DNA of 64,000 bases from Mizuhopecten yessoensis. Lineage: Eukaryota. Shown piece after piece: positions 4,726 to 45,724 of the stretch. The stretch spans positions 395,033 through 459,032 of the forward strand of contig NW_018408906.1 of assembly GCF_002113885.1 (NCBI RefSeq), written 5' to 3'. Each line of letters opens with the position of its first letter. Position 1 is the stretch's first letter. The translations under genes were made by a program, and so were the position numbers. The notes beneath the pieces were generated by a model. That model had not been told where the DNA came from and did no database searches. It was given only the letters and a program-made list of their open reading frames with translations.

Positions 4726-4763
4726 CTGCCAGTATTGTTGCCATACTCATCGTCAGAATCCAT
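4726..4763 (-). CDS. ATG exon (MDSDDEYGNNTG, phase 2) of a second ZNFX1-like copy; the remainder would lie left of the window
   Basis: Identical to 37814-37851. Acceptor TTTTTCCAG (exon starts 4818), donor GTGAGT. Confidence 0.6.
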
Positions 4764-10535: not shown

Positions 10536-10775
10536 GGGCCCATATTCATGAAACCGTTCTCATGCTCAAGCATGGATTTTGTGCTCAAACCAACATTCTT
10601 GTAACTCACTTAAATCATGTCAAACGATCAAAACGTCAAATGAAAACATTGAAAACAGTATTTGACTTTAAGTCTCTTCAAAGTTTTTCCAAATCATTGA
10701 AAAAATAAAATTTTATTATCAAGTTATAACCGGAACAAGAAATTAGACTTGAGCACAAATCCCATATTTGAGCAT
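10536..10775. mobile_element. MITE (PIF/Harbinger-like), right TIR truncated by the satellite
   Basis: The intact copy at 43437-43700 has ~50 bp TIRs. Here the right TIR stops at GAGCAT. Confidence 0.65.
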
Positions 10776-13700
10776 TCTGTGAGGGTACATGCTAACATGT
10801 CCATATCTGTGAGGGTACATGCATGCATGTACATATCTGTGAGGGTTCATGCATGCATGTACATGTCTGTGAGGGTGGATGCTTGCATGTACATGTCTGT
10901 GAGGGTAGATGCTTGCATGTACATATCTGTGAGGGTACATGCTAACATGTACATATCTGTGAGGGTACATGGTAACATGTATATATCTGTGAGGGTACAT
11001 GCTTGCATGTACATATCTGTGAGGGTTATGCTTGCATGTACATATCTGTGAGGGTACATGCTTACATGTATATATCTGTGAGGGTACATGTTAACATGTA
11101 TATATCTGTGAGGGTACATGCTTGCATGTACATGTCTGTGAGGGTACATGCTTACATGTCCATATATTGAGGGTACATGCTTACATGTACATATCTGTGA
11201 GGGTCATGCTTGCATGTACATATCTGTGAGGGTACATGCTTACATGTACATATCTGTGAGGGTTATGCTTACATGTACATATCTGTGAGGGTCATGCTTG
11301 CATGTACATATCTGTGAGGGTGCATGCTAACATGTACATATCTGTGAGGGTGCATGCTAACATGTACATATCTGTGAGGGTTCATGCTAACATTTGTATA
11401 TCTGTGAGGGTACATGCTTGCATGTACATATCTGTGAGGGTTCATGCATGCATGTACATGTCTGTGAGGGTAGATGCTTGCATGTACATATCTGTGAGGG
11501 TACATGCTAACATGTACATATCTGTGAGGGTACATGCTAACATGTCCATATCTGTAAGGGTACATGCTTGCATGTATATATCTGTGAGGGTACATGCTAA
11601 CATGTACATATCTGTAAGGGTACATGCTAACATGTCCATATCTGTAAGGGTACATGCTAACATGTACATATCTGTAAGGGTACATGCTAACATGTCCATA
11701 TCTGTAAGGGTACATACTAACATGTACATATCTGTGAGGGTACATGCTAACATGTCCATATCTGTAAGGGTAGATGCTTGCATGTACATATCTGTGAGGG
11801 TACATGCTAACATGTACATATCTGTGAGGGTACATGGTAACATGTATATATCTGTGAGGGTACATGCTTGCATGTACATATCTGTGAGGGTTATGCTTGT
11901 ATGTACATATCTGTGAGGGTGTATGCTTACATGTATATATTTGTGAGGGTACATGCTAACATGTATATATCTGTGAGGGTACATGCTTGCATGTACATGT
12001 CTGTGAGGGTATATGCTTACATGTCCATATATGGAGGGTACATGCTAACATGTACATATCTGTGAGGGTTATGCTTACATGTACATATCTGTGAGGGTCA
12101 TGCTTGCATGTACATATCTGTGAGGGTACATGCTAACATGTATATATCTGTGAGGGTACATGCTAACATGTATATATCTGTGAGGGTACATGCTAACATG
12201 TACATATCTGTGAGGGTGCATGCTAACATGTACATATCTGTGAGGGTGCATGCTAACATGTACATATATGTGAGGTACATGCTTGCATGTACATATATGT
12301 GAGGTACATGCTTGCATGTATATATCTGTGAGGGTACATGCTAACATGTATATATCTGTGAGGGTACATGCTAACATGTATATATCTGTGAGGGTACATG
12401 CTAACATGTACATATCTGTGAGGGTGCATGCTAACATGTACATATCTGTGAGGGTGCATGCTAACATGTACATATATGTGAGGTACATGCTTGCATGTAC
12501 ATATATGTGAGGTACATGCTTGCATGTATATATCTGTGAGGGTACATGCTAACATGTATATATCTGTGAGGGTACATGCTTGCATGCACATGTCTGTGAG
12601 GGTACATGCTTGCATGTGCATATATGGAAGGTACATGCTTGCATGTACATATCTGTGAGGGTACATGCTTACATGTACATATCTGTGAGGGTTATGCTTA
12701 CATGTACATATCTGTGAGAGTCATGCTTGCATGTACATATCTGTGAGGGTGCATGCTAACATGTACATATCTGTGAGGGTGCATGCTTGCATGTACATGT
12801 CTGTGAGGGTACATGCTAACATGTCCATATCTGTGAGGGTACATGCTTGCATGTTCATATCTGTGAGGGTACATGCTAACATTTATATATCTGTGAGGGT
12901 ACATGCTTGCATGTACATATCTGTGAGGGTTCCTGCATGCATGTACATGTCTGTAAGGGTAGATGCTTGCATGTACATATCTGTGAGGGTACATGCTAAC
13001 ATGTACATATCTGTGAGGGTACATGGTAACATGTATATATCTGTGAGGGTACATGCTTGCATGTACATATCTGTGAGGGTTATGCTTGTATGTACATATC
13101 TGTGAGGGTGTATGCTTACATGTATATATTTGTGAGGGTACATGCTAACATGTATATATCTGTGAGGGTACATGCTTGCATGTACATGTCTGTGAGGGTA
13201 TATGCTTACATGTCCATATATGGAGGGTACATGCTAACATGTACATATCTGTGAGGGTTATGCTTACATGTACATATCTGTGAGGGTCATGCTTGCATGT
13301 ACATATCTGTGAGGGTACATGCTAACATGTATATATCTGTGAGGGTACATGCTAACATGTATATATCTGTGAGGGTACATGCTAACATGTACATATCTGT
13401 GAGGGTGCATGCTAACATGTACATATCTGTGAGGGTGCATGCTAACATGTACATATATGTGAGGTACATGCTTGCATGTACATATATGTGAGGTACATGC
13501 TTGCATGTATATATCTGTGAGGGTACATGCTAACATGTATATATCTGTGAGGGTACATGCTTGCATGCACATGTCTGTGAGGGTACATGCTTGCATGTGC
13601 ATATATGGAAGGTACATGCTTGCATGTACATATCTGTGAGGGTACATGCTTACATGTACATATCTGTGAGGGTTATGCTTACATGTACATATCTGTGAGA

Positions 13701-22788: not shown

Positions 22789-25094
22789 GGTGTCTTCCCA
22801 TTTATCCAACTTCTGAAAAAAGCTATTCCCATTTATCCAACTTTATGTTTTATGCCCTGTGGGTATGTTTGTTTAGTAGTATATTTTAATCATTAGGTGA
22901 AATAACCAAGACAAATTGTTCCATGGATAGAGGGAAAAGTATCATAGAGTGGATAAATTTATTTAATTTTAATTCATTTTGAAAGGTGAAAGTATGTATA
23001 AAATATTCATGAGAAATATGAACAGTGTTAAAGAAGCACCCAAGCCTTTTTCTACTAATTTATTCATAAATTTTGAATACTACTCACTAAGTATCCCAAG
23101 CTAGTTTTTAGCTTATAAGCACTGACCCACTGACAAAATTCATTCTTCAAGTTTGACCATGGCGAACGCACAAGTAAGAGTAGACTACATTCGACATGCT
23201 AGAGGCCACTACTTAGCTGTAAACGGCTACAGATATGTGATTAAGACCAGAAAACAGGGTAGAGATGCAGAACTAGCCTACTGGAAGTGCGCCGAGAAAG
23301 ATTGCCCAGGCACAGCCAACACCAGAGACAACATGGTAACCAGATTTCCTAGAGACCACAACCACCCGACAACTCGTGCTGACATAGATGCCAAGAAATT
23401 TCTAGCAACACTCAGAGAAAAGGCAGCCAAAACTCTGGAACCACTACCCGCATTGTACGACAGCGAGATCATCAAATTCAGAAACAGAGAATGGGACGAT
23501 CACACACACCAGGTCGTTGAACAGATACCAACTTTCGTCAGTACCAAATCAGCTATGTACCGAGAACGCAACAGTGAACTACCACCACTACCAACCACAC
23601 GTGATGCCATTAATCTCCTGGGAGAATGGCAAGAGACTACTACAGGAGCACAATTCCTACTAGCAGATGATGGTGACCACAACAAGATCCTGGTATTTGG
23701 TACTACAGACAACCTCCGCCATCTAAGTAACGCTGACATGGAACTTTTTACGCCAGTCCTGTACTTTTCACCCAGCTGTACACACTGCATGCACTCATAG
23801 ACGACGAGATGTACCCACTAATATTCGCCTTCCTACCTGACAAATGCCAGATCACCTACCAACGCCTATTCGAGATCGTTAAGACAGCAGCAGCAAACAA
23901 CAACACACCACTCAATCCAACCACTATATTCCTCGACTTCGAGTCTTCAGCCCGTAACGCAGCAGAGACAGTCTTTCCACAAGCGTCGATCAAAGGTTGT
24001 CTATTCCACTACTGCAAACGCATATGGAGAAAGGTACAGAAACTTGGACTAGCAGACCAGTACACCAACGACAACCTACTCAACCTACATATAAGACGAG
24101 CTTCAGCATTGCCACTAGTCCCCATCAACCAAGTAGATGATGTATGGTTCCACGCAATTGAAGACTACGAGACCGATGACGCAAAGATCACCAAGTTCAA
24201 CGACTACGTTACTGAGCAATGGATCGGGATGGAGACAGCAAAATGGAACCACTACTCAACAGTTGGACCCAGAACAACAAACCATTTAGAAGGATGGCAC
24301 CACAAACTCAACAACCAACTTCACAGAGCACACCCAAACCTCTACGTCATCATCGAAAAACTCAAGCACACTCAAGCAGCAAATGAGATCCGACTTATCC
24401 AGTATGCAGCTGGTGGCACTAGAAAGACAAGAAAGCTGAAATACAGAATCCTAGACTCCAGACTTCAGCGACAGAAACAACGACTCATTCAAGGGGAAGT
24501 TGACATCTACCAGTATACAGACACAGTGTCACGCCTGCTGAAACTTCAATGAACTGATATGACTCTATAATATTCGATTGATATAGTGCTTTGCTTAATT
24601 CAAATATTTTAAATATGAAATTTACTATACATTGTAACTTTTCTATCATGTAAAATGATTCATATTCCTATCATCTTATTTCTAGTGCTTTATATCAATT
24701 TATGAAATAAATATTATTTTGTATCATTTTGTATATTTAATAATTAATATGTCTGTTAATAATATATATGTCTGATATTATTTGAATAAATATATTGAAA
24801 ATAGAAATTAGTCTTATTGTGAAAGCATATATCATAACTACAGAATCAATAAAAAAACCCACACAAATAAAAACAAAATGAAGCATTCAAATCAACTTAA
24901 TAGAAATAACTTTGAATATAGATACACATTTCCAAAAGGACTTAATTTCTGTATCATATTTTTAACCCAACACTTGACCCAAGCTCCAATTAGTGTTTGT
25001 TGTTTTAACAATATACCCTATTCCCACTTATCCAACCCAAACTTTTTACCTGTAGTACCTATTTTTCAAAAAGTTGGATAAATGGGAATGAACC
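22789..25094 (+). mobile_element. Full-length Mutator-like (MULE) DNA transposon
   Basis: Imperfect TIRs GGTGTCTTCCCATTTATCCAACTT / AAGTTGGATAAATGGGAATGAACC. An 8-bp TSD GTAAATTG lies at 22781-22788 and 25095-25102, and there is an internal transposase. Confidence 0.9.
23159..24552 (+). pseudogene. FLYWCH + MULE DDE transposase, frameshifted at ~23737
   Basis: FLYWCH: YWKCAEKDCPG...HNHP. After the frameshift: GTFYASPVLFTQLYTLH...YPLIFAFLPDK...DFESSARNA...GCLFHYC...TTNHLEGWH. The D of DGTF has been removed by the deletion. Confidence 0.88.
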
Positions 25095-29787: not shown

Positions 29788-30746
29788 TCAAAACAAAGGA
29801 TCACGAACTGACGCTCAATAATGGAAACGTCCATTGCAACATGCATTATTTACATATCTTTGTTTTGTTTGTGTATAATATTATCAGTGAAATAAGACAT
29901 CATAACTTTATGTCTTGTGCCACTTACACCAACTTTTGTATCTGCCAAAGTACTACTACAATAAAACCGCAACTTTCAAAATCAAGCGCGGATTTCTCAA
30001 TAGAAATCTTCCGCTCTGAATACATTCTTTAAGAATGAAAGGTTGGCGATTTTGCTTTAATGAAAGTGAACTGTTTGATATCATATTTTCACAGTACTAG
30101 TTCCAAAGTCTAACAATATCGCTAAACATCATAAGTTAAATGATATATAATATACGTAATACAAAGTCAGGAAATAAAAGCCACTCACCAACACTAAGTT
30201 TGTTTCACAACCTAATGAAACCTTACAAAGCTGTGGTACCCTCACAGCGCAAATAAAAATTAAATACAACATGGATCAAAACCAAACCCCCCCCCCCCCA
30301 AAAAAAAAAAAAAAACAGAACAAAACATGAAATGACGCATAATGATCAACAATGTAAATGAAGTAAGGTAGCGGCCGCATTGACATATAATATGATCTTA
30401 CCTTTCTGTATTACATGGATATAAGGGACAGATTGACGTCATTTCCTGTGATACCATGTAACGCCTACATGCTAAAGTGTTCACACATATAATGAATTAA
30501 TATACACAGGTATATACTATGTTTTTATGATATATAACGACACCAGATTAAAGTCAGCGATACCTTAGTTTCATTTCTCACAGAGGTAGGATCCATAGAC
30601 AATAGAATCCGACATTTCCCTGTGGTCGTAACTATTTCCTTTTTATGAATGTAATCGAGAGTGATGTACAACTCTCAATGTTGTATGCTTAACGAAGTGA
30701 TATCTGCCATGGAAATGCATGTACAATCAATTTTTCCAGAACTTTT

Positions 30747-30907
30747 TTAATCGCTCCAGTAGGGACACTTCGCGCATGCATAGTGTTCCTGACATCGCCC
30801 GGAAAGTCCAGGAGCCTCCAACTGAGTACAGTTGTTCTCAATGCACTGGAACAACATCTTCGTTCGCTGCTTTTGACCAACGATTGGTGGATTGGCAGGC
30901 ACCGAGT
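30747..30907 (-). CDS. ZNFX1-derived gene, last coding exon (8): A20-like zinc finger CIENNC-x11-CQEH
   Basis: Acceptor TTTTTCTCAG, phase 1. Reads DSVPANPPIVGQKQRTKMLFQCIENNCTQLEAPGLSGRCQEHYACAKCPYWSD*. Confidence 0.7.
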
Positions 30908-31410
30908 CTGAGAAAAATAAAACTACTTGTTGAAATTTTGATGTTTTTTTTAATGATTTTTAAACCAACGAACGTGTTTATGACGTCACAGTACCCACAT
31001 CGGGACACTTGAAGGAAAAAGTTGCAAGAAATTTGTATGCTGTGCAAAAAAAGTATTTTTAAATTGATAATATTGATTTAAAGATGTTTATATACCAATA
31101 AACATTATATGAACTTTATTTACTGCCACTCATGGTTACAATCACAGTTTTAGTTTGTATATAATGACGAAAATGTAACGTTTTAAATTTATGCGCAACG
31201 CGACGTTATTAATTTTCATTTTTTGTATGTGATTTTTCACAATCCTATTATTTCAAAATTATTGGTAGATTTGTAACATATATAATTGTTCTTTGCTTAA
31301 ATCAACTAAATACCTTGGTCTGCCATGTCATTTCGCCTCAAAGTTTAGATAACATTAGAAACAACTTTAAGTTTATCTAAGTATAATTGGAGTTCAGTAA
31401 GAAAACCTAC

Positions 31411-31545
31411 CTGTCTCCGATTCTATCTGAATCCTATCGTTTGTCTTTTTCAATTCTGTTTCTACTTCCGGTGCGGATTGTGAGTATTTCGGTCTAACAG
31501 GCTTCACATCTGGTCTTCGGTATTCTTCGTATGAAGACGTAATTT
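31411..31545 (-). CDS. ZNFX1-derived gene, exon 7 (phase 1-1, 135 bp)
   Basis: TTTTAG acceptor, GTAGGT donor. Open frame ITSSYEEYRRPDVKPVRPKYSQSAPEVETELKKTNDRIQIESET. Confidence 0.72.
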
Positions 31546-31958
31546 CTAAAATTGAAACAAAGACTTGCAATATTTTTCGTTAAAACGCAAGTGTCATTTC
31601 AGTTTATTTTGAAATGGAGAGTGAATTAACAGAAATCCAAACCCTAGCGTTCATCTTGTACACTGTAAGCCATGTATATGATCTATATGTAGCAAAAGGG
31701 ACTTGGGACAAAGAAATACGAACTTTTCTGAGGTATTCACATACTTGATCTTCGTATAAATTTCGATGAAAATCTGTTGCGAAATGAAATCAGTAGAGTC
31801 ATGAATGTATGTATCGCCTTGTTATAGGACGGAACTTTTTTGGGGAAAAAATAAACAACAAACAAAATGCATTTTGATTTAGAACAATGTAAAATGGAAG
31901 CTCGAAATTAGAGAATATGGACGAGGTGGATGAAACACAATAGCAGATGAAGACCTAC

Positions 31959-32156
31959 CAGTTTTAACGTCCGTTTGATGAGTAAAGTACGCCTTTCTCC
32001 ATTCTGAGTCTGCTGGACGTGACGTTGGTTTTGCAGCATGTTCAACAGGTTTAGGGTCTGTCAACTGATAGCCGGCGGGTTTGCTTTGGAAACGGCTAAT
32101 CCTATCCCTAACTGACCTCGTTTCAATTTCCATAGACTCTTCAGATCTTGTAGTTT
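31959..32156 (-). CDS. ZNFX1-derived gene, repeat exon 6 (GYQLTDPKPV)
   Basis: GATAG acceptor, G|GTAGG donor, 198 bp, phase 1-1. Paralogous to exons 4 and 5. Confidence 0.68.
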
Positions 32157-32296
32157 CTATCAATTTAAATTTTGTGTAAATGTGAATAAACTTACTTTCG
32201 GTTGATTTAATATATCAAACGCCATCGATATTTGTACGCGTCATTTACGACATCATTTCATGATTTTGAAACGTAATAATGACAATGAAAACCTAC

Positions 32297-32509
32297 CCCT
32301 CTTAACGTCCGTTGTAAGGATAAAGCACGGCGGTTTCATTCCTACGTCTGCTTGTTGTGACGATGTGTTTGCAGCTCGCATAACAGGTTTAGGATCTGTC
32401 CACTGATAGCCAGTTGGGTTGTAATGGTCACCATCGATCACTTCTTTTCTAGAGGGGACACTCATTTTCCTAACCGCCTCCTTATTGATGTCCATTGCCT
32501 CTTCAGCTT
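32297..32509 (-). CDS. ZNFX1-derived gene, repeat exon 5 (GYQWTDPKPV)
   Basis: GATAG acceptor, G|GTAGG donor, 213 bp, phase 1-1. Confidence 0.68.
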
Positions 32510-32793
32510 CTATCCATTAAAATTTTGAAGATGGAAAAATATTTTTTAGTTATTTTATAAATCAAACAACATATCGATATTCATTGGTTATATTTTCCAC
32601 AAAGAATTGGGATTTTGCATAATAATAATAACCGTTGAAATCCTATCCATGTTGACGTCCGTTTGAGAGGGGATGAACACCTGTATTAGTTCTGTGTCTA
32701 TAAAAGAATTTAATTATATGCTTTTAGTTATCAAACCGATGTTATCGATATCCAGGGTTCCTTTTACTTTAACAATGATCAATGATGACCTAC

Positions 32794-33015
32794 CAAGCTT
32801 CCTGTCGGTTTGAGAGGTAAAGGAAGTCTTTCTTAATCCGGCGTCTCCGTGTGTAACATATGTTTGCCCTACCGGAACAACAGGCTTAGGGTCAGTCCAT
32901 TGTAACCCGTAGGAGTTGATTTGGGCACGGCTTATCACATCTTCTCTGGTGGAGGGAGCCATGCTCCTAATGGATTCTCTATTCGCTTCCGTAACCTCTT
33001 CTGATTCTATAACTT
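32794..33015 (-). CDS. ZNFX1-derived gene, repeat exon 4 (GLQWTDPKPV)
   Basis: GATAG acceptor, G|GTAGG donor, 222 bp, phase 1-1. Confidence 0.68.
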
Positions 33016-33178
33016 CTATCAATTCAAATGTCGAAGAACAAAATTATTTATAACCTTGTGTTGAACAAATCTAAACTAAACACCACCGTAATTTGCATTT
33101 CACATTTTCGTCAAAATTACGTTAAGAATATTGCATTGAAAATAGTCTCGTAAATGATCAGGGGAATATATAAAATAC

Positions 33179-33328
33179 CTTTTGTTTCTGTGGTTGCCCT
33201 GTCGTTAGGGATGTTCAGAATGGATAGAAGATCTGCTCTATGAAGACACCGAGGAACTACACCTGAATAAGGTGATGTTCTCAAGCGTTGTAGAGATTCT
33301 CTGTCGTACGATATCCTTACTGATGAGC
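33179..33328 (-). CDS. ZNFX1-derived gene, exon 3 with 4E-BP-like motif RISYDRESLQRLRTSP
   Basis: TTTGTACAG acceptor, AG|GTATT donor, 150 bp, phase 1-1. Reads GSSVRISYDRESLQRLRTSPYSGVVPRCLHRADLLSILNIPNDRATTETK. Confidence 0.72.
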
Positions 33329-33731
33329 CTGTACAAAGAAAATGCCGACTTATGCCAGAGTTCTCTCAATAAATGCTGTGTTACTGTTAACGTACACATT
33401 TTAGCGGTACTTTTATTACAGCGCTTTCAGTATTGCGTTAAATTATGATTGCACTAATCGACGTTTCTTTAAATAGTTTTCTATACTACATATTGTGAAT
33501 GCTCCTATTCATCAATCCGCTAATCCGTAAAAAAATTAATCATGATACGCTAAAATTTGAGTCTGCAAAAAGAAGTACTTTATATTCACTATTTTATTTC
33601 AAAAGCATTCTGTTTGCAATTATCTTAATCGAACCACTTCCTCCATAGATTCTTGGTTAAAATGTGTTTCAATAAATATTAGAAATGGCTATGAATTTGT
33701 TTTCTCTTGTTTATGGGACAAAATGTCCTAC

Positions 33732-35374
33732 CTGAATTGGTCCTCTCCGATGTATTCATCTTGCGGTCAGTGCACTTCTCGAAGCAAGGAACATGTAAGC
33801 GTCCTTGGAAACAACCTCCACATGTTCCAGAACAGGGATGACCGCAATCTAATTTAGTAGTGCACTTTTCAGTGCAAGAGAAGTCTTCAATTCTTTGGTA
33901 ACATTTGCACTGTATGAAGTGTCCACAAATCAATTTGCGCTGAATGAGCTCTGGACATTGAATCTGGTGGGTGTTGTATTCTTTACACTTTCCACAAGTT
34001 CCGCTGCATATGTGACCACAAATCAGCTTTTTCTCGCATTTTGACCGACACTTGAAACTGTGGGGATCCTGATGACATGGGCCTAATTGCTCGTGCCTGC
34101 AAACTGGAATAGTCTTGATAATGTTCTTCATGCATTTCCCACACTCTTCCCAGCATTTCTTAGTGCAAACATGTCCTTTATCGCAAACCTGAGCACATGG
34201 CTTCAAACAACGGTATTTCTGATGAGCACTGTCAAAGATATGACAATATTGTTCACAAACATGACCACAAGGTAGACGTGTTTCACATGGTGTGGTACAG
34301 CCTCCATTTGGTGTCTCATTGAATTGCAGGTCCTTCAGATCAGGCAGTATCGGAAGTTCTCTGAAATTGTTAGGGGGAGGCAATGATTCCATGTCTCTAT
34401 GATTCCGTCGGCCACCAGGTTGAATGTTTTTATCTCTTCTTTGGTTGTCAATGTCCTGTACAAGTGTTTTCATAATTGTAGATACATCATTAATCAATTC
34501 CAAAATATCTGGATTCTGTTGTAAATTGAATGTATGGTCCTCAGCAATAGCATCTAACATCAACACAGCACTACTAACAGTGTGGACCTCCTGTGGCATT
34601 CGTTGCATCAACTCTTTCATTATCTTGCAGACATCTTGAATTATGCACTGAAGATGGTAAGGGGGCATCACAGCAATCCTGGACTTGATTTTTGCAAGGA
34701 ATGTGGTCACTTGAAGCATCATGACATTCTCTTGAACCATTAATCCCACTAATTGTAACTTGCTGTGGCTTTTAGAAGAGGAGCAAGCTTTTCCTAGTAC
34801 AGATAGAAGCAATCTACTCCAGTCGATCTGCATGTTAATGTTCTTTAATAGAGTTTGAAATCCACTACTTTCCAACAGTAATTCCATTAGAACATCATCT
34901 GAATTGGTCTTTTCACTGAGCTCACTGAGTTTCCTGTAGCCAAACATTCTTGGTGGTCTGGAACGAGTATCATTTCTTCTTGGTCTCGAACTATCACGGT
35001 ATCTAGCATTAGTAGCATCTTGTACATCCTCATTTCTGTTTGGTACCGTATCCAATCTACTGAGAGAAGAATATCTTCGGAGGTCAGCAGCTCCTCGAGT
35101 CAATCCACCAGATGCTCCTCGAGTCAATCCACCAGATGCTCCTCTAGACCCGCCTCTTCCACCCCTACTGCCTCGTCTTCGGCCATCTCCTCTATGTCCT
35201 CTCTCTGCATTACCGCCTCTGCTTTCACTTCTACTCTGAGAAGACTCAGGGTTTCTTTGGTGTCCTCCTCCTGGACCGCTGGATCTGCCTCCTTGTCTGC
35301 TATTCCTTCTTGTACCATTTGTATTTTCTGTTTCATCGTCATCAAGATTGAGAATTCTTAGTGGGCCTGTTCTG
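33732..35374 (-). CDS. ZNFX1: ZNFX1-like (NFX1-type zinc finger-containing protein 1 paralogue), large exon 2: RGG-rich region, helical N-domain and NFX1 zinc fingers; helicase absent
   Basis: FGYRKLSELSEK..DDVLMEL and PPNNFRELPILP are ZNFX1 N-terminal motifs. GGCTTPCETRLPCGHVC and the repeated L.CGH.C are NFX1 fingers. The frame is open upstream of the ORF-track start to the acceptor CTAACATTTCAG (phase 2); the donor is G|GTAGG. Confidence 0.85.
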
Positions 35375-35473
35375 CTGAAATGTTAGACGTTCTATGTTCA
35401 GAGGTGTTGAGTGCTTGAGCAAGTCAACTCACACAGACATTGTTCTAAAGATAAGTGTAAATATTATTACATC

Positions 35474-37690
35474 TGATTTTCTGTCAGATCCTAGGATATG
35501 ATTACTGTCACCCCTAGGGTATGATTTCTCTGTCAACCCTTAGGCATGGTTTCTCTCTCACCCCTAGGATATGACCTCTGTCACCCCTAAGTTATGATTT
35601 CTCTGTCATCCCTAGGATATGGTTTCTCTGTCACCCTTAGGGTATGGTTTCTTTCACCCCTAACGTATGATTTCACTTTCATCCCTGGTATATGATTTCT
35701 ATCAACCCTAGGGTATTGTTTCTCTGTCACTCATTCAGGTATGATTTCTCACGCTCTCTAAAACGATTCCTCTGTCAACTCCTAGGAAATGATTTCTCTG
35801 TCACCCCTGGTATATGATTTCTAGCAACCCTAGGGTATTGTTTCTCTGTCATCCCTAGGGTATGATTTCACTGTCACTCACTGTGTAATGATTATCCCTG
35901 TCAGCCCCTAGGGTATTATTTTTCTGTCAGCCCCTAGTGTATGATTTCTCTGTCAGCCCTAGATATGCTTTCTGTCAACCCTAGGGTAAAGTTTCTCTAT
36001 CATCCCTAATATATGATTTCTGTCACCCCTAGTGTAGGGTGTCTCTGTCACCCCTAGGTTATGATTTCTGTCAACCCTAGGGTATGGTTTCTCTGTCAGC
36101 CCTAGGATATGCTTTCTGTCAACCCTAGGGTAAAGTTTCTCTGTCATCCCTAATATATGATTTCTGTCACCCCTAGGGTAGGGTGTCTCTGTCACCCCTA
36201 GGTTATGATTTCTGTCAACCCTAGGGTATGGTTTCTCTGTCACCCCTAGGATATGCTTTCTGTCACCACAAGGTTATGATTTCTCTGTCACCCCCTTATA
36301 TATGATTTCTGTCACCACAAGGTTATGATTTCTGTCACCCATAGGATATGATTTCTGTCACCCCTAGGGTATGATTTCTCTATCACCCCTAGGATATGAT
36401 TTCTCTAACCCCTAGGTTATGATTTCTCTGTCACCCCTAGTATATGATTTATGTCACCCCTTCTCTGTCACCCCTAATATATATGATAACTATCAACCCT
36501 GTGGTATGGGTTCTCTGTCATCCCTTCAGGTATGATTTTCTCACCTCTGTCACCCCGAGGGTACTGTTTCTATGTCACCTTCTAGGGTATGATTTCTGCA
36601 TCTGACGCTAGGGTATGATTTATCTGTTACCCATTAGGGTATTTTTTTCTGTGCTATTAGGGTATGATTTATCTGTTACCTATTAGGGTACGATTTTTCT
36701 GTGTTACTAGGGTATGATTTATCTGTCACTTACAAGGATACGATTTTTCTGTCACCCCTCGGGTACAGGGAATGATTTCGCTGTCACCCATAGGGTATGA
36801 TTTATCTGTTACCCACTAGGGTTTAATTTTTCTGTGTTACAAGGATATGATTTCTGTCAACCCCTAGGATACGATTTTTCTGTCACCCCCTCGGGTACAG
36901 GGGATGATTTCGCTGTCACTCACTGTGGAATGATTTTCTCTGTCAGTACCTTAGTTATGATTTCTCAGTCACCCAATAGTATGGAATGATTTTCTCTGTC
37001 ACTCACTGTATAATAATTATCTCTGTCAGCCCTTAGGGTATGATTTATGTGTCACACCCTAGGGTTTGATTTCTCTTGTTACCTTCTAGGGCATGATTTC
37101 TGTGTCACCCCACAGTGTATGACTTCTTTGTCACCCCCAAAGGTATGATTTCTCTATCACCCACCAGAATACGATTTCTCTGTTACCTGCTAGCCTCTTC
37201 CCCCCCCNNNNNNNNNNNNNCCCCAACCCCTACCCCAACCCAACCCAAACCCAACCCAGGTATGATTTCTCTGTTAGCCTCTAGGGTATGATTTCTATGT
37301 GTCCCTCTAGGGTATGATTTCTCCGTCACCCTCTAAGGATATGATTTCTCTGTCATTCTTTAGGGTATGATTTCTCTGTCACTCGCTAGGGAATGATTTC
37401 TCTCCCTTTCTCCCTAGGGATTGATTTCTCTCCCTTTCCCCCAGGGAATGATTTCTCTCCCTTTCCCCATAGGGAATGATTTATCTGTCACCCCCTTTGG
37501 TACGATTTCTATGTCACATCTAGAGGACTTTTTCTCTGTCTCTCTGTCTCTGGTACGATTTCTATGTCACACACTAGGTTGTCATTCCCTAGGGTATGGT
37601 TTCTCTGCAACCACCTTTGAGTAGGTTTTCTCTCTCTTCCCCTAGGGAATAATTTCTCCACCCCATGTGGTACGATTTTTCTGACACCCC
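35474..37690. repeat. 23-25 bp minisatellite in intron 1 of the ZNFX1-like CDS
   Basis: Same unit family and order of variants as 1-4600, but shorter. Confidence 0.95.
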
Positions 37691-37813
37691 TATGTATAGT
37701 ATTCCTTAAATCGTTGTCAAACCGTTACTGTCATATTCTGACAAAGACCTTTTAAAAATATACATTTCTAACGCGTTAAAACATGTATGTTGAACTTGTA
37801 TTTAGCCACTCAC

Positions 37814-37851
37814 CTGCCAGTATTGTTGCCATACTCATCGTCAGAATCCAT
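37814..37851 (-). CDS. ZNFX1-derived gene, first coding exon (MDSDDEYGNNTG)
   Basis: Exon 37814-37906 is bounded by TTCCAG and GTGAGT, with an in-frame TAG before the ATG. Its phase 2 matches the acceptor at 35374. Confidence 0.7.
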
Positions 37852-38977
37852 TGTCTATTTGACTGCCATCTATGTAAGTCAACTAGCTCCTTCAGCATCT
37901 AAATTCCTGGAAAAATGTAAAACTATAAATTACACTAACACATGAACAGCGTACGTGTATTTGCAATGTATTTTAAGTGATTTATCAAGAAGCACTGCTT
38001 AGAAATGGGAGGGAATGTGTGTCATTTTATACATTCAACTGTCTGACTTGTCGCAATGAAAGCTTAAAAGATATAAATCCTGTTCAAGTTGTTGAAGAGC
38101 TGGGGTAAAATGTCTCATTGCGTGGACACTTGACTACCTTTGAAACACTGCCCTACATTTTTCCATATATGTGACCACAAGACCCTTTAAAAACATAATA
38201 GGCCTACAACATTATCGTAAAAGGCACACTACTCCCAAAGGCCATTCAAAATTTACAATACAGCACTTCCGCATTACGTGGGGTAAAAATGGCCGCGAAA
38301 CTTAATTGCAGCTAAAGTTGCCTGGTATATTTTTTGGCAATATATGTCCACCTACCCCTCCGATGCATAGATCATTTACTCCACAACCTTACCTTATATG
38401 GAACATTATCTTATATGGAACATCATCATATTTCCCCAGGCTTACCCACTTAACTCCTCAAACATTATAATACAACATTTTCGCTTTAATCGTATTTGTA
38501 TGGTACCCTTCCTAATTTCAACCCCAGCCGCTTCACTCATTCACCCCTGGAATTTAACAATAGACTTTCCCATGTATTGTTTTGGAAGAGTCTGAATGTG
38601 ACATCCAGTGGATTACGTCAATACACAGTGAGTAGATATATAGTGCAAATTGGCCTAGCGATCTAAAATTATATTACTTCCTTAATTGCTGATCAGGATG
38701 AAACGAAGATCCACCGATTTAGCTATTAACTATATATAACTATATAAGATAAGATATTGATTGAGCATTGTATGATATAAATATGCAATATTCAATTCCT
38801 TAATGGCTTCAGTCATTTCAATGCAAGGTTATATAATCATTTACCTACCCTACAGTCTGTCTGCGGCTGCACCGGAACACGCACGGATACAATATAGCAC
38901 CTGATCACACGTCACAAATAATTGACCTGCAGAAAAACCAATTCCTGCAATTCTGTTAAACACACTTCAAAAAGGGT

Positions 38978-43436: not shown

Positions 43437-43700
43437 GGGCCCATATTCATGAAACCGTTCTCATGCTCAAGCATGGATTTTGTGCTCAAACCAACATTCT
43501 TGTAACTCACTTAAATCATGTCAAACGATCAAAACGTCAAATGAAAACATTGAAAACAGTATTTGACTTTAAGTCTCTTCAAAGTTTTTCCAAATCATTG
43601 AAAAAATAAAATTTTATTATCAAGTTATAACCGGAACAAGAAATTAGACTTGAGCACAAATTCCATATTTGAGCATGAGAACAGTTTCATGAATACGGCT
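43437..43700. mobile_element. MITE with ~50 bp TIRs (PIF/Harbinger-like)
   Basis: CCCATATTCATGAAACCGTTCTCATGCTCAAGCATGG... versus ...CCATATTTGAGCATGAGAACAGTTTCATGAATACGG. Confidence 0.7.
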
Positions 43701-44130: not shown

Positions 44131-44344
44131 GTTCAATTTATGAAATTTAAAAGAAAATTGATGGAGTAATTTTAATCATATTTCTGAACTAGTACTATTG
44201 TGTATGAATTATATCTACTTTCATTTTATAGGGTTTGTCCGGTTATAAGAAGCACAAATATTATTAAGTCATATAAAATTTCACTAATTGGTTTCTCAAT
44301 TTTCTTCATTTTCCAGGCACGTCCAACTGAAAAACAGTTCCACC

Positions 44345-45026
44345 ATGTTTCCTCGTGGTGTGTGTACAAGGTTTAGCACATCACAACTTCACCTGGTGTT
44401 GAAGCAGTGTAAATCACTGACAGGTCAGTTTCACACGGGATCTGCAGAATCATCTGCAGCTGAGAAACAGCATGAGAGGCAGCAAGGAAATCAGCTTGAA
44501 AATCAGCAGGATAATCAGCAAGAGACGAAATCTGATTCAGATTTAGCTACCAAGGAGAATTCTGAACAAGTTCAGGTTCTCACCGAGGAACAAATGTCTT
44601 CCATACAACCTCAAAATGAAGCAGCCTCAAAACATCCAGATCTTTGGAAAAATCCAATAGATATGAGAATTCTTCCTAAAAAATATAAATTCACAGACGA
44701 GGAAAAGAAAATGTTTCAGCTGTCAACCTACATATTTCACGAAATCGGAGAATCGGGCAAAAACAAAAGAAATTTTCTGAAAGCGTTAGCGATATACAAG
44801 AAACGGGAGAAGGTGTACAATAGGGGCCTGGTGGAGTTTCTATCGACTGGTTTGGATAACATGAAAGAATGGGGTGTACATAAAGACAAAGAAGTGTACA
44901 AGGCTATGATAGGCACTATGCCCCAAGAGAAGTTTCTTCCAAAGTCAAAATGGATGGCCGAGCTGGGACACTATCCCAAGCAACAACAGTGTGCTATAGA
45001 CATTCTGGAAAAAATGCAAAATAATG
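44345..45026 (+). CDS. ECSIT: ECSIT coding exon 1 (mitochondrial presequence-like N-terminus)
   Basis: RGLVEFLSTGLDNMKEWGVHKDKEVYKAMI..MP...HYPKQQQCAIDILEKM matches the ECSIT family. Donor G|GTAAG. Confidence 0.92.
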
Positions 45027-45724
45027 GTAAGACTGATGGAAAGAAGTTCAGCAACCGTTTTCAGGGATCAATCTAGACTTGATTCACTATACCGTTTATG
45101 GGTAGTTCCCCTACAGAAGAAAATTCCCCTGTTCTTTGAAATTCCCCCTATGTGCTACAAAACTCCCTTATTTCAACAAGAAAATAGCTGTTTTTTCTTC
45201 ACAATATTTCCCCTATATATGTTTTCTTTAAAGTTCAACAGTTAAAATGCATAATACTGCATATATACATTTTCTCCACATAATTTTAACAAAAATTCTA
45301 CGATTTTAAGCTTAAAATTGTTTAAAAATTGAAATATACTGCACACATGTATATCGGACAAAACATTTATCTTTTACCTTCGTGACGCTATATAGCCTTG
45401 TATCAAATTTTAATTCCCCCCAAATCTTAAAAAGGGTAGTTTCCCCTAAAACCTAGATTGATCCCTGGTTTTAATTATTTTTCTGATACTTAAAGTGAAG
45501 TACGTATACTGTGAAAGCAGATATTTTCGTGGGGCCCATATTTTGTGGTTTTCCAACAAAACACCATTTCATGGGTACATGATTACGAGTATCCACTCGA
45601 ACGGAGAATTGTTTTATATATCAAACTTTTATTTTATTCATTGACATATGGATTTGTGAATGAAGATTACCCATGAAATCAGTGAAATTAAAAAACCCAT
45701 GACAAATAGTGATTTCACAGTATA

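What the first reader, a model, noticed from the sequence alone, without database searches (positions are those of the whole stretch)
30747..37851. Chimeric helicase-less ZNFX1 paralogue carrying a 4E-BP-like motif, repeat exons and an A20-like zinc finger
Seen: eight exons with canonical splice sites and matching phases (2, then 1 throughout) join into an uninterrupted 2760-nt/919-aa frame. The order is RGG-rich region, ZNFX1 helical N-domain, NFX1 zinc fingers, YDRESL motif, WTDPKPV repeats, and C-x4-C-x11-C-x2-H. Known: ZNFX1 is an antiviral/RNA-silencing SF1 helicase with NFX1 fingers and a C-terminal ubiquitin-ligase region; 4E-BPs block cap-dependent translation; A20 fingers bind ubiquitin. 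Inference: a repurposed immune adaptor or decoy that couples ZNFX1 partner/RNA binding to eIF4E and ubiquitin. I do not know of this architecture being described.
Basis: partly seen in the sequence, partly recalled or inferred. Interest (0 to 1): 0.9.

Follow-up and report, generated by a model that had tools for sequence, protein, structure and literature searches.

The report
Gutted copy of tailed scallop ZNFX1
This is a recent, internally deleted and probably decaying second copy of a scallop antiviral RNA-helicase gene; its unusual tail (a 4E-BP-like translation-factor-binding motif and an A20-fold zinc finger) comes from the intact parent gene, which has the same tail in three scallop genera.

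Summary
The eight-exon, 919-aa model is real and identical to RefSeq XP_021379516 (Mizuhopecten yessoensis). The N gap lies in intron-1 satellite, not in coding sequence.

It is not a chimera. It is one unit of a tandem duplication. The neighbouring unit, about 50 kb away, encodes full-length ZNFX1 (2567 aa) and already has every tail exon. The copy lost the helicase and the Miz/RZ ligase region through two in-frame deletions with 3-bp microhomology. It also has a terminal frameshift, and its branch evolves near neutrality (20 nonsynonymous to 5 synonymous changes).

DNA contigs from two other samples fork at the deletion points. RNA confirms the splice junctions, but mostly from the parent.

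The unusual part is the parent's tail. It is conserved in Pecten and Argopecten and was found nowhere else: a 4E-BP-like motif (passes the Pfam cut-off in Argopecten), WTDPKP repeats and a finger predicted to have the A20 fold. It follows an RZ finger that lacks its catalytic Cys/His.

Best reading: a relaxed duplicate (0.55); a decoy is the rival (0.27). The scan had not noted this on other DNA.

The parts
37814..37851 (-). Coding exon 1 (12 codons + 2 nt); identical copy at 4726-4763 belongs to the full-length parent
   Evidence: RNA loose ends at 35375/35377 match exon 1
35375..37813 (-). Intron 1, mostly a 25-bp satellite; contains the assembly gap 37208-37220 (non-coding, not filled)
33732..35374 (-). 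Exon 2: fusion of three parent segments (parent residues ~13-366, 1429-1610, 2189-2201)
34426..34938 (-). ZNFX1 ARM (helical) domain, complete; approximate limits
   Evidence: PDB 9EVE E=5e-4, 9Q9Z E=4e-28; helical stretch in a low-confidence model
34314..34316 (-). Deletion junction 1: 3186 bp (1062 codons) of helicase removed in frame; 3-bp microhomology
   Evidence: DNA contigs end at 34314 in X1 and X4 and at 34316 in X1
33773..34313 (-). Retained NFX1-type zinc fingers (about the first half of the stalk), cut at both ends
33770..33772 (-). Deletion junction 2: about 2750 bp removed (later fingers, Miz/Z-RING, RZ, one intron, most of the next exon); frame kept; 3-bp microhomology
   Evidence: forks at 33772 in X1 and X4 and at 33770 in X4
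33179..33328 (-). Exon 3 with the 4E-BP-like motif RISYDRESL...SP at about 33270-33317; 10 nonsynonymous differences from the parent
32794..33015 (-). Exon 4, repeat exon 1 (WTDPKP)
32297..32509 (-). Exon 5, repeat exon 2 (WTDPKP); 9-nt in-frame deletion relative to parent
31959..32156 (-). Exon 6, repeat exon 3 (LTDPKP)
31411..31545 (-). Exon 7, degenerate repeat/linker
30747..30907 (-). Exon 8: C-x4-C-x11-C-x2-H finger at about 30783-30845; a 1-bp deletion at 30777/30778 replaces the conserved C-terminal helix
10776..43676 (.). Duplication unit B (30-bp satellite + body) that carries the finding
10775..10776 (.). Duplication junction: end of unit A joined to the first unit of the 30-bp satellite
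4726..4763 (-). Exon 1 of the full-length parent; its other exons lie left of the window (G000:C5579:384394-373890)

Best explanation
SHOWN: a scallop-specific ZNFX1 gene with a long C-terminal tail was duplicated in tandem in the M. yessoensis lineage. The copy in this finding then lost the helicase and the ligase region by two microhomology-flanked in-frame deletions, and its last helix by a frameshift. INFERRED: the copy is under relaxed selection. It is a young, still-open, probably weakly transcribed duplicate drifting toward a pseudogene, and any protein made can at most weakly titrate the parent through its ARM domain. INFERRED for the parent, where the tail was selected: helicase and ARM bind RNA; the 4E-BP-like motif docks on eIF4E and blocks eIF4G on the captured capped RNA; the Miz domain may still write ubiquitin while the RZ finger is catalytically dead; the A20-fold finger plus helix binds ubiquitin or another partner.
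For: The parent has every tail exon, 92-100% identical. Non-coding divergence of the two units is 3.3% over 15 kb and pS is 3.3%, so the split is recent. Changes polarised on Pecten: copy 20 N: 5 S (dN/dS about 1.1; P=0.001 against 0.25), parent 15: 7. The same regions show 0.20-0.24 between species. Amino-acid changes away from the outgroups: 19 in the copy, 8 in the parent. They include H>G, F>V and P>R just after the 4E motif. The frameshift removes a helix conserved in three genera. The breakpoints cut through zinc sites rather than at domain ends. The long RNA contigs are parent-type, and X18 crosses both breakpoints without a fork. No helicase-less tailed protein was found in any other species.
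Against: The frame survived two large deletions and two small ones (3 and 9 nt), whereas only 19% of non-coding indels here are multiples of three. The only frameshift is 30 nt before the stop. This suggests selection for an open frame, although the finding was picked because it is open. Copy-type letters outnumber parent-type about 2:1 in both DNA runs. RNA-like run X17 forks at 34314 and shows copy-type letters. Polarisation is noisy because dS to Pecten is about 1, and the counts are small.
Confidence: 0.55

Rival explanations
1. Functional decoy or dominant-negative regulator. The copy keeps ARM and early zinc fingers, the surfaces that build human ZNFX1 dimers and filaments. It co-assembles with the parent, dilutes helicase and ligase activity, and adds extra eIF4E-binding tails.
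For: Four frame-preserving indels. ARM-ARM and ARM-ZnF contacts build human assemblies, and ARM binds RNA by itself (10.1101/2025.10.14.682297; PMC13710534). The copy is present in both DNA runs tested, apparently above parent dosage. RefSeq models four transcripts.
Against: dN/dS about 1 on the copy's branch; damage next to the 4E motif and loss of the terminal helix. The hydrophobic last position of the motif is Q. RNA is mostly parent-type. Not found in other scallops.
Confidence: 0.27
2. The two units are divergent haplotypes of one locus, joined through the 30-bp satellite during assembly, so the finding is a deletion allele, not a paralogue.
For: The junction falls exactly at a satellite edge. 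Gaps lie in both introns 1. The exon-1 region differs by only 0.33%. RNA alleles are mosaic.
Against: Both unrelated DNA runs hold both forms, with parent-type letters at 0.28-0.45 of depth (mean 0.36), not 0.5. Fourteen DNA or untyped runs from six studies hold 85-91% of the copy's words, against 49% shared with the parent; these were ranked as best holders, so this is a selected set. There is 3.3% divergence, many indels and a private MULE insertion. Only one N lies between the parent's exon 1 and the copy.
Confidence: 0.13
3. The deletions are assembly errors in a collapsed repeat and the short gene does not exist.
For: Fragmented short-read-type assembly with gaps nearby; no contig bridging a junction was listed among the rows shown (341 not shown).
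Against: Independent DNA runs break exactly at the breakpoints (34314, 34316, 33770, 33772), as expected when both paths exist in the graph. The copy has its own substitutions on both sides of each junction.
Confidence: 0.03
4. One reading: a chimeric adaptor newly built by joining a ZNFX1 fragment to unrelated 4E-BP-like and A20-like exons.
For: The tail is absent from every other ZNFX1 examined and its exons are symmetric phase 1-1, so exon gain did happen once, in an ancestor of these scallops.
Against: The gain predates this copy: it is in full-length orthologues of three genera.
Confidence: 0.02

Closest known systems
M. yessoensis full-length ZNFX1-like (XP_021379511-15), adjacent parent; orthologues XP_033730449 (Pecten maximus) and XP_069123635 (Argopecten irradians)
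   Same: Same N-terminus, ARM, early zinc fingers, 4E-BP-like exon, repeat exons and terminal finger
   Different: The parent keeps the helicase (all SF1 motifs), the Miz/Z-RING region, a degenerate RZ and the terminal helix
Human ZNFX1 (PDB 9Q9Z, 9EVE)
   Same: ARM and NFX1 fingers; the parent matches at E=1.6e-290
   Different: Human ends in an active RZ finger (C1860/H1881) and has no such tail. The scallop parent has C-x4-H-x11-C-x2-C without the catalytic Cys or His. The copy lacks helicase, Miz and RZ.
4E-BP / Thor / Mextli eIF4E-binding motif (PF05456)
   Same: RI.Y.R..L..L..SP; the profile's ten best PDB hits are all eIF4E-binding peptides; the Argopecten piece scores 24.3 bits against a cut-off of 24
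   Different: Embedded in a 2570-aa helicase. The hydrophobic last position is M in Argopecten and V in Pecten, but K in the parent and Q in the copy. No PGVT-like non-canonical site was recognised. Binding is untested.
A20-type zinc finger (A20 ZF7/ZF4, Rabex-5, ZNF216; PF01754)
   Same: C-x4-C-x11-C-x2 spacing; the predicted fold's best hits in both searches (rmsd about 1 A over 30-40 residues)
   Different: His as fourth ligand, no aromatic-Gly pair after the second Cys, no Pfam zf-A20 match; weak sequence likeness instead to the HOIP LDD finger (PF18091, E=0.002, below cut-off)
Truncated decoy paralogues of immune sensors (e.g. CARD-only proteins, LGP2; from my own knowledge)
   Same: A duplicate that keeps interaction domains and drops effector domains
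   Different: Those are conserved under purifying selection; this copy is species-specific so far and near neutral

Membership tests
ZNFX1 helicase/E3 family (copy) | N-terminal ARM domain | tested here: met
ZNFX1 helicase/E3 family (copy) | UPF1-like SF1 helicase | tested here: not met
   1062 codons deleted; present in the parent
ZNFX1 helicase/E3 family (copy) | NFX1-type zinc-finger stalk | tested here: met
   about half retained
ZNFX1 helicase/E3 family (copy) | Miz/Z-RING and RZ ligase domains | tested here: not met
   deleted in the copy; the parent keeps a Miz-like region and an RZ without catalytic Cys/His
Canonical eIF4E-binding proteins | YXXXXL-hydrophobic motif (PMC8558276) | tested here: inconclusive
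   met in Argopecten (M) and Pecten (V); last position K in the parent and Q in the copy
Canonical eIF4E-binding proteins | Pfam eIF_4EBP cut-off | tested here: not met
   copy 16.1 bits, parent 16.8, Pecten 16.0; only the Argopecten piece passes, 24.3 against 24
Canonical eIF4E-binding proteins | Binds the dorsal surface of eIF4E and competes with eIF4G | not testable with these tools
   needs a pull-down or complex prediction
A20-type zinc finger | C-x2/4-C-x11-C-x2-C and Pfam PF01754 match | tested here: not met
   fourth ligand is His; no hit at this locus among 17 genome matches up to E=10
A20-type zinc finger | A20 finger fold | tested here: met
   parent finger model (pLDDT 86-94 in the core): top hits A20 ZF7, Rabex-5, ZF4, ZNF216; Foldseek prob 0.94 but E=0.58; VIA Z 3.6-4.1, small-domain scores that are not significant alone
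A20-type zinc finger | Ubiquitin binding | not testable with these tools
   the aromatic-Gly pair seen in the genome's A20-like fingers is absent here
Conserved functional decoy paralogue | Purifying selection on the truncated copy | tested here: not met
   20 N: 5 S on the copy's branch; small counts
Conserved functional decoy paralogue | Own transcripts across the deletion junctions | tested here: inconclusive
   fork at 34314 and copy-type letters in X17; no fork in X18

The most novel reading that the evidence does not exclude
Scallops evolved a ZNFX1 that carries its own 4E-BP module: an RNA-sensing helicase with a dead RZ catalytic site that binds eIF4E directly and shuts off translation of the RNA it captures, reading ubiquitin through an A20-fold finger. 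The helicase-less copy could then tune it as an ARM-mediated decoy; that added step is less likely, about 0.1-0.15 for both together.
Probability: 0.35. Interest if true: 0.7.

Novelty: new variant of a known kind. Interest (0 to 1): 0.45.

Why it matters
The helicase-less copy on its own is probably an ordinary young duplicate in an expanded family (at least 11 ZNFX1 loci in this genome). The parent's tail matters more. Human ZNFX1 is reported to silence viral RNA by trapping it in ubiquitin-driven aggregates. A scallop version with a conserved 4E-BP-like motif and a catalytically dead RZ finger would be a direct link from an RNA sensor to the cap-binding factor. That is testable with one peptide pull-down, and it concerns antiviral defence in farmed scallops. 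I found no paper on it in the searchable library; Blasi et al. 2022 on metazoan ZNFX1 (PMID 35063603) was not read.

Tried and rejected
Pfam scans of each exon gave only a weak eIF_4EBP hit; no zf-A20.

Searches for a donor of the tail found nothing outside the scallop ZNFX1 orthologues: word-indexed search, full HMMER scan of the finger profile over 1.84 billion proteins, own-genome profiles and ESM Atlas (no usable hit).

A crustacean YSRENLQ match (P0060) lies inside a RING-like repeat and does not score with the motif profile; rejected as chance.

Retrotransposition or cryptic-intron loss was rejected: the deleted segments have no GT-AG ends and all other introns are kept.

The AlphaFold model of exon 2 was unusable (mean pLDDT 36.6).

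The genome paper was not held, so the inbreeding level of the sequenced animal was not checked. Paper searches for ZNFX1 with eIF4E, bivalve, scallop or oyster gave no description of this tail.

The joined translation was used only locally, to check the frame and its identity to a database protein already returned, and that database protein's id was looked up for its accession numbers. N stretches were not filled.
Full report
OBSERVATION. The eight exons are at the coordinates given, with canonical splice ends and phases 2,1,1,1,1,1,1. They give 2760 nt and 919 aa with only the terminal stop. The protein is identical to RefSeq XP_021379516-18, 'uncharacterized protein LOC110466995' of Mizuhopecten yessoensis, so the gene is annotated but undescribed. 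The gap at 37208-37220 is inside a 25-bp satellite in intron 1. It touches no codon and was not filled. RNA contigs of run X18 continue from 35375/35377 into exon 1. Exon 1 is identical in the two gene copies, so the protein is the same whichever exon 1 is really linked.

WHAT IT IS. Searching the genome with exon 2 found a 97%/91% identical match about 45-50 kb to the left, inside a 2012-aa open frame. The downstream exons are duplicated there too. The region reads: satellite + unit A, satellite + unit B, then ECSIT; the junction is at 10775/10776 and unit B ends at 43676. Unit A encodes a full-length ZNFX1 of 2567 aa (XP_021379511-15) with all SF1 motifs. It already carries the 4E-BP-like exon, the repeat exons and the terminal finger. 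The finding equals the parent's residues 1-366, 1429-1610 and 2189 onward. Deletion 1 removes 3186 bp of helicase. Deletion 2 removes about 2750 bp: later fingers, the Miz/Z-RING and RZ region, an intron and most of the next exon. Both have 3-bp microhomology, no GT-AG ends, and keep the frame. They are not at clean domain ends. The C-Q-N-H pair before the first retained Cys is lost, and the second junction keeps only the first Cys of a finger unit (effect on folding inferred). A 1-bp deletion at 30777/30778 replaces the C-terminal helix.

IS THE COPY REAL? DNA contigs of two other samples (X1, 2025; X4, 2022) end exactly at the breakpoints: 34314 and 33772 in both, 34316 in X1 and 33770 in X4. 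An assembly graph does this when deleted and undeleted paths both exist. This is indirect: no bridging contig was among the rows shown. Parent-type letters make up 0.28-0.45 of depth at three sites in each run (mean 0.36). Contig depth is not copy number, but it argues against a rare allele and hints at two copies per parent. Fourteen DNA or untyped runs of six studies hold 85-91% of the copy's words, against 49% shared with the parent; these are selected best holders. Non-coding divergence between the units is 3.3% with many indels and a MULE private to unit B. A haplotype join through the satellite is not excluded (0.13).

EXPRESSION. All six downstream splice junctions occur in RNA contigs from two studies, and intron 33370-33689 has no coverage there. 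The long contigs are parent-type: in X18 a 4502-nt contig runs through the helicase and a 2482-nt contig through the ligase region into the tail exons, with no fork. This shows that the tail is spliced onto full-length ZNFX1. For the copy the evidence is weaker. X17 (RNA by guess) has a contig ending exactly at 34314 and copy-type letters at 33904-33919 and 34092-34149, but no visible fork at 33772, and its alleles are mosaic. Exonic words shared with the parent alone would give a share of 0.28, all exonic words 0.54; four RNA-type runs show 0.41-0.42. This fits partial expression or allele mixing.

SELECTION. Copy versus parent: 46 nonsynonymous and 19 synonymous differences, pN/pS 0.67, not different from 1 (P=0.17). 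Polarised on Pecten, the copy's branch has 20 N and 5 S (about 1.1), the parent's 15 and 7 (about 0.6). The ARM, finger, motif and last exons show 0.20-0.24 between species and the helicase 0.12. The copy's count rejects 0.25 (P=0.001), but the two branches do not differ significantly from each other (P=0.5) and dS to Pecten is about 1, so polarity is noisy. Changes in the copy include H>G, F>V and P>R right after the 4E motif. Against pure decay: four indels kept the frame, where 19% of non-coding indels are multiples of three. Having no stop after 25-35 neutral changes has probability 0.17-0.27. The finding was chosen for being open, which weakens this argument.

THE TAIL. Full-length orthologues in Pecten maximus and Argopecten irradians have the same tail. 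Inside it, the motif (58-74% identity) and the finger plus helix (53-63%) stand out from linker and repeats (25-42%). No other protein with the tail was found. The motif profile's ten PDB hits are all eIF4E-binding peptides (4E-BP1 E=0.003, Thor, Mextli, eIF4G), and the match extends to the SP after the helix. The Argopecten piece passes the Pfam eIF_4EBP cut-off. The canonical consensus needs a hydrophobic last residue (PMC8558276): M in Argopecten, V in Pecten, but K in the parent and Q in the copy, so binding may be weaker in this species. The finger has no Pfam zf-A20 match. Its predicted structure ranks A20 ZF7, Rabex-5, ZF4 and ZNF216 first in both fold searches, at about 1 A rmsd but with modest scores. 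A finger with the same His-ended spacing occurs in an A20-like gene of this genome. A weak sequence likeness to the HOIP LDD finger also appears. Ubiquitin binding is untested. In all three scallops the RZ finger reads C-x4-H-x11-C-x2-C (C2008, H2013, C2025, C2028 in the parent). It keeps four zinc ligands but lacks the nucleophile Cys and base His that human ZNFX1 needs (10.1101/2025.10.14.682297). A Miz-like region is retained.

MECHANISM. Parent (inferred): ARM and helicase capture RNA, the tail motif occupies eIF4E and excludes eIF4G, and the finger plus helix reads ubiquitin or a partner, perhaps compensating for the dead RZ site. Human ZNFX1 is reported to silence translation of trapped viral RNA through K63-ubiquitin aggregates (10.1101/2025.09.05.674436). 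Copy: no ATPase and no ligase are possible (shown by the deletions). It keeps ARM and early fingers, which in human ZNFX1 form the ARM-ARM and ARM-ZnF contacts and bind RNA, so a decoy effect is physically plausible. The near-neutral rate, damage beside the motif, loss of the terminal helix and parent-dominated RNA make relaxed decay the likelier state (0.55 against 0.27).

VERDICT. Observation confirmed; the 'chimeric' reading rejected; module identifications largely upheld. The copy is not a member of the catalytically competent ZNFX1 family but a deleted duplicate of one. The tailed, RZ-dead scallop ZNFX1 is a new variant of a known kind. Interest 0.45.

Noticed in passing
window 22789-25094: MULE DNA transposon (FLYWCH ORF 23153-23800, MULE transposase ORF 23809-24552) with terminal inverted repeats and an 8-bp target duplication; present in unit B only, empty site in unit A.
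   Followed up: partly
window 44288-45076 (+): ECSIT coding exon (PF06239, E=1e-26), head-to-head with the deleted copy; the duplication ends about 600 bp before it.
   Followed up: no
window 43440-43700 and 10775/10776: The duplication breakpoint cuts an inverted-repeat (MITE-like) element and joins it to the first unit of a 30-bp satellite.
   Followed up: partly
G000:C5579:378367-384402 and next exon (parent): The RZ finger of the parent and of both orthologues lacks the catalytic Cys and His, and is split by a phase-1 intron.
   Followed up: partly
G000:C757:57205-61160 (L036): A20/OTUD7-like gene with canonical A20 fingers and one C-x4-C-x11-C-x2-H finger; weak best hit (E=1) of the tail-finger profile and a possible relative of its source.
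   Followed up: partly
G000 contigs C1714, C3953, C76693, C3248, C4840, C5228, C1625: At least 11 ZNFX1-family loci, three in tandem on C1714 (one with stops), and a 4445-aa open frame on C3953.
   Followed up: no
window 37720-38936: The 1.2 kb around exon 1 differs by only 0.33% between the units, against 3.3% overall: gene conversion or assembly homogenisation.
   Followed up: no
window 30650-35440, runs X1 and X4: Copy-type letters are about twice as deep as parent-type in both DNA runs; a collapsed second copy of unit B is possible.
   Followed up: partly
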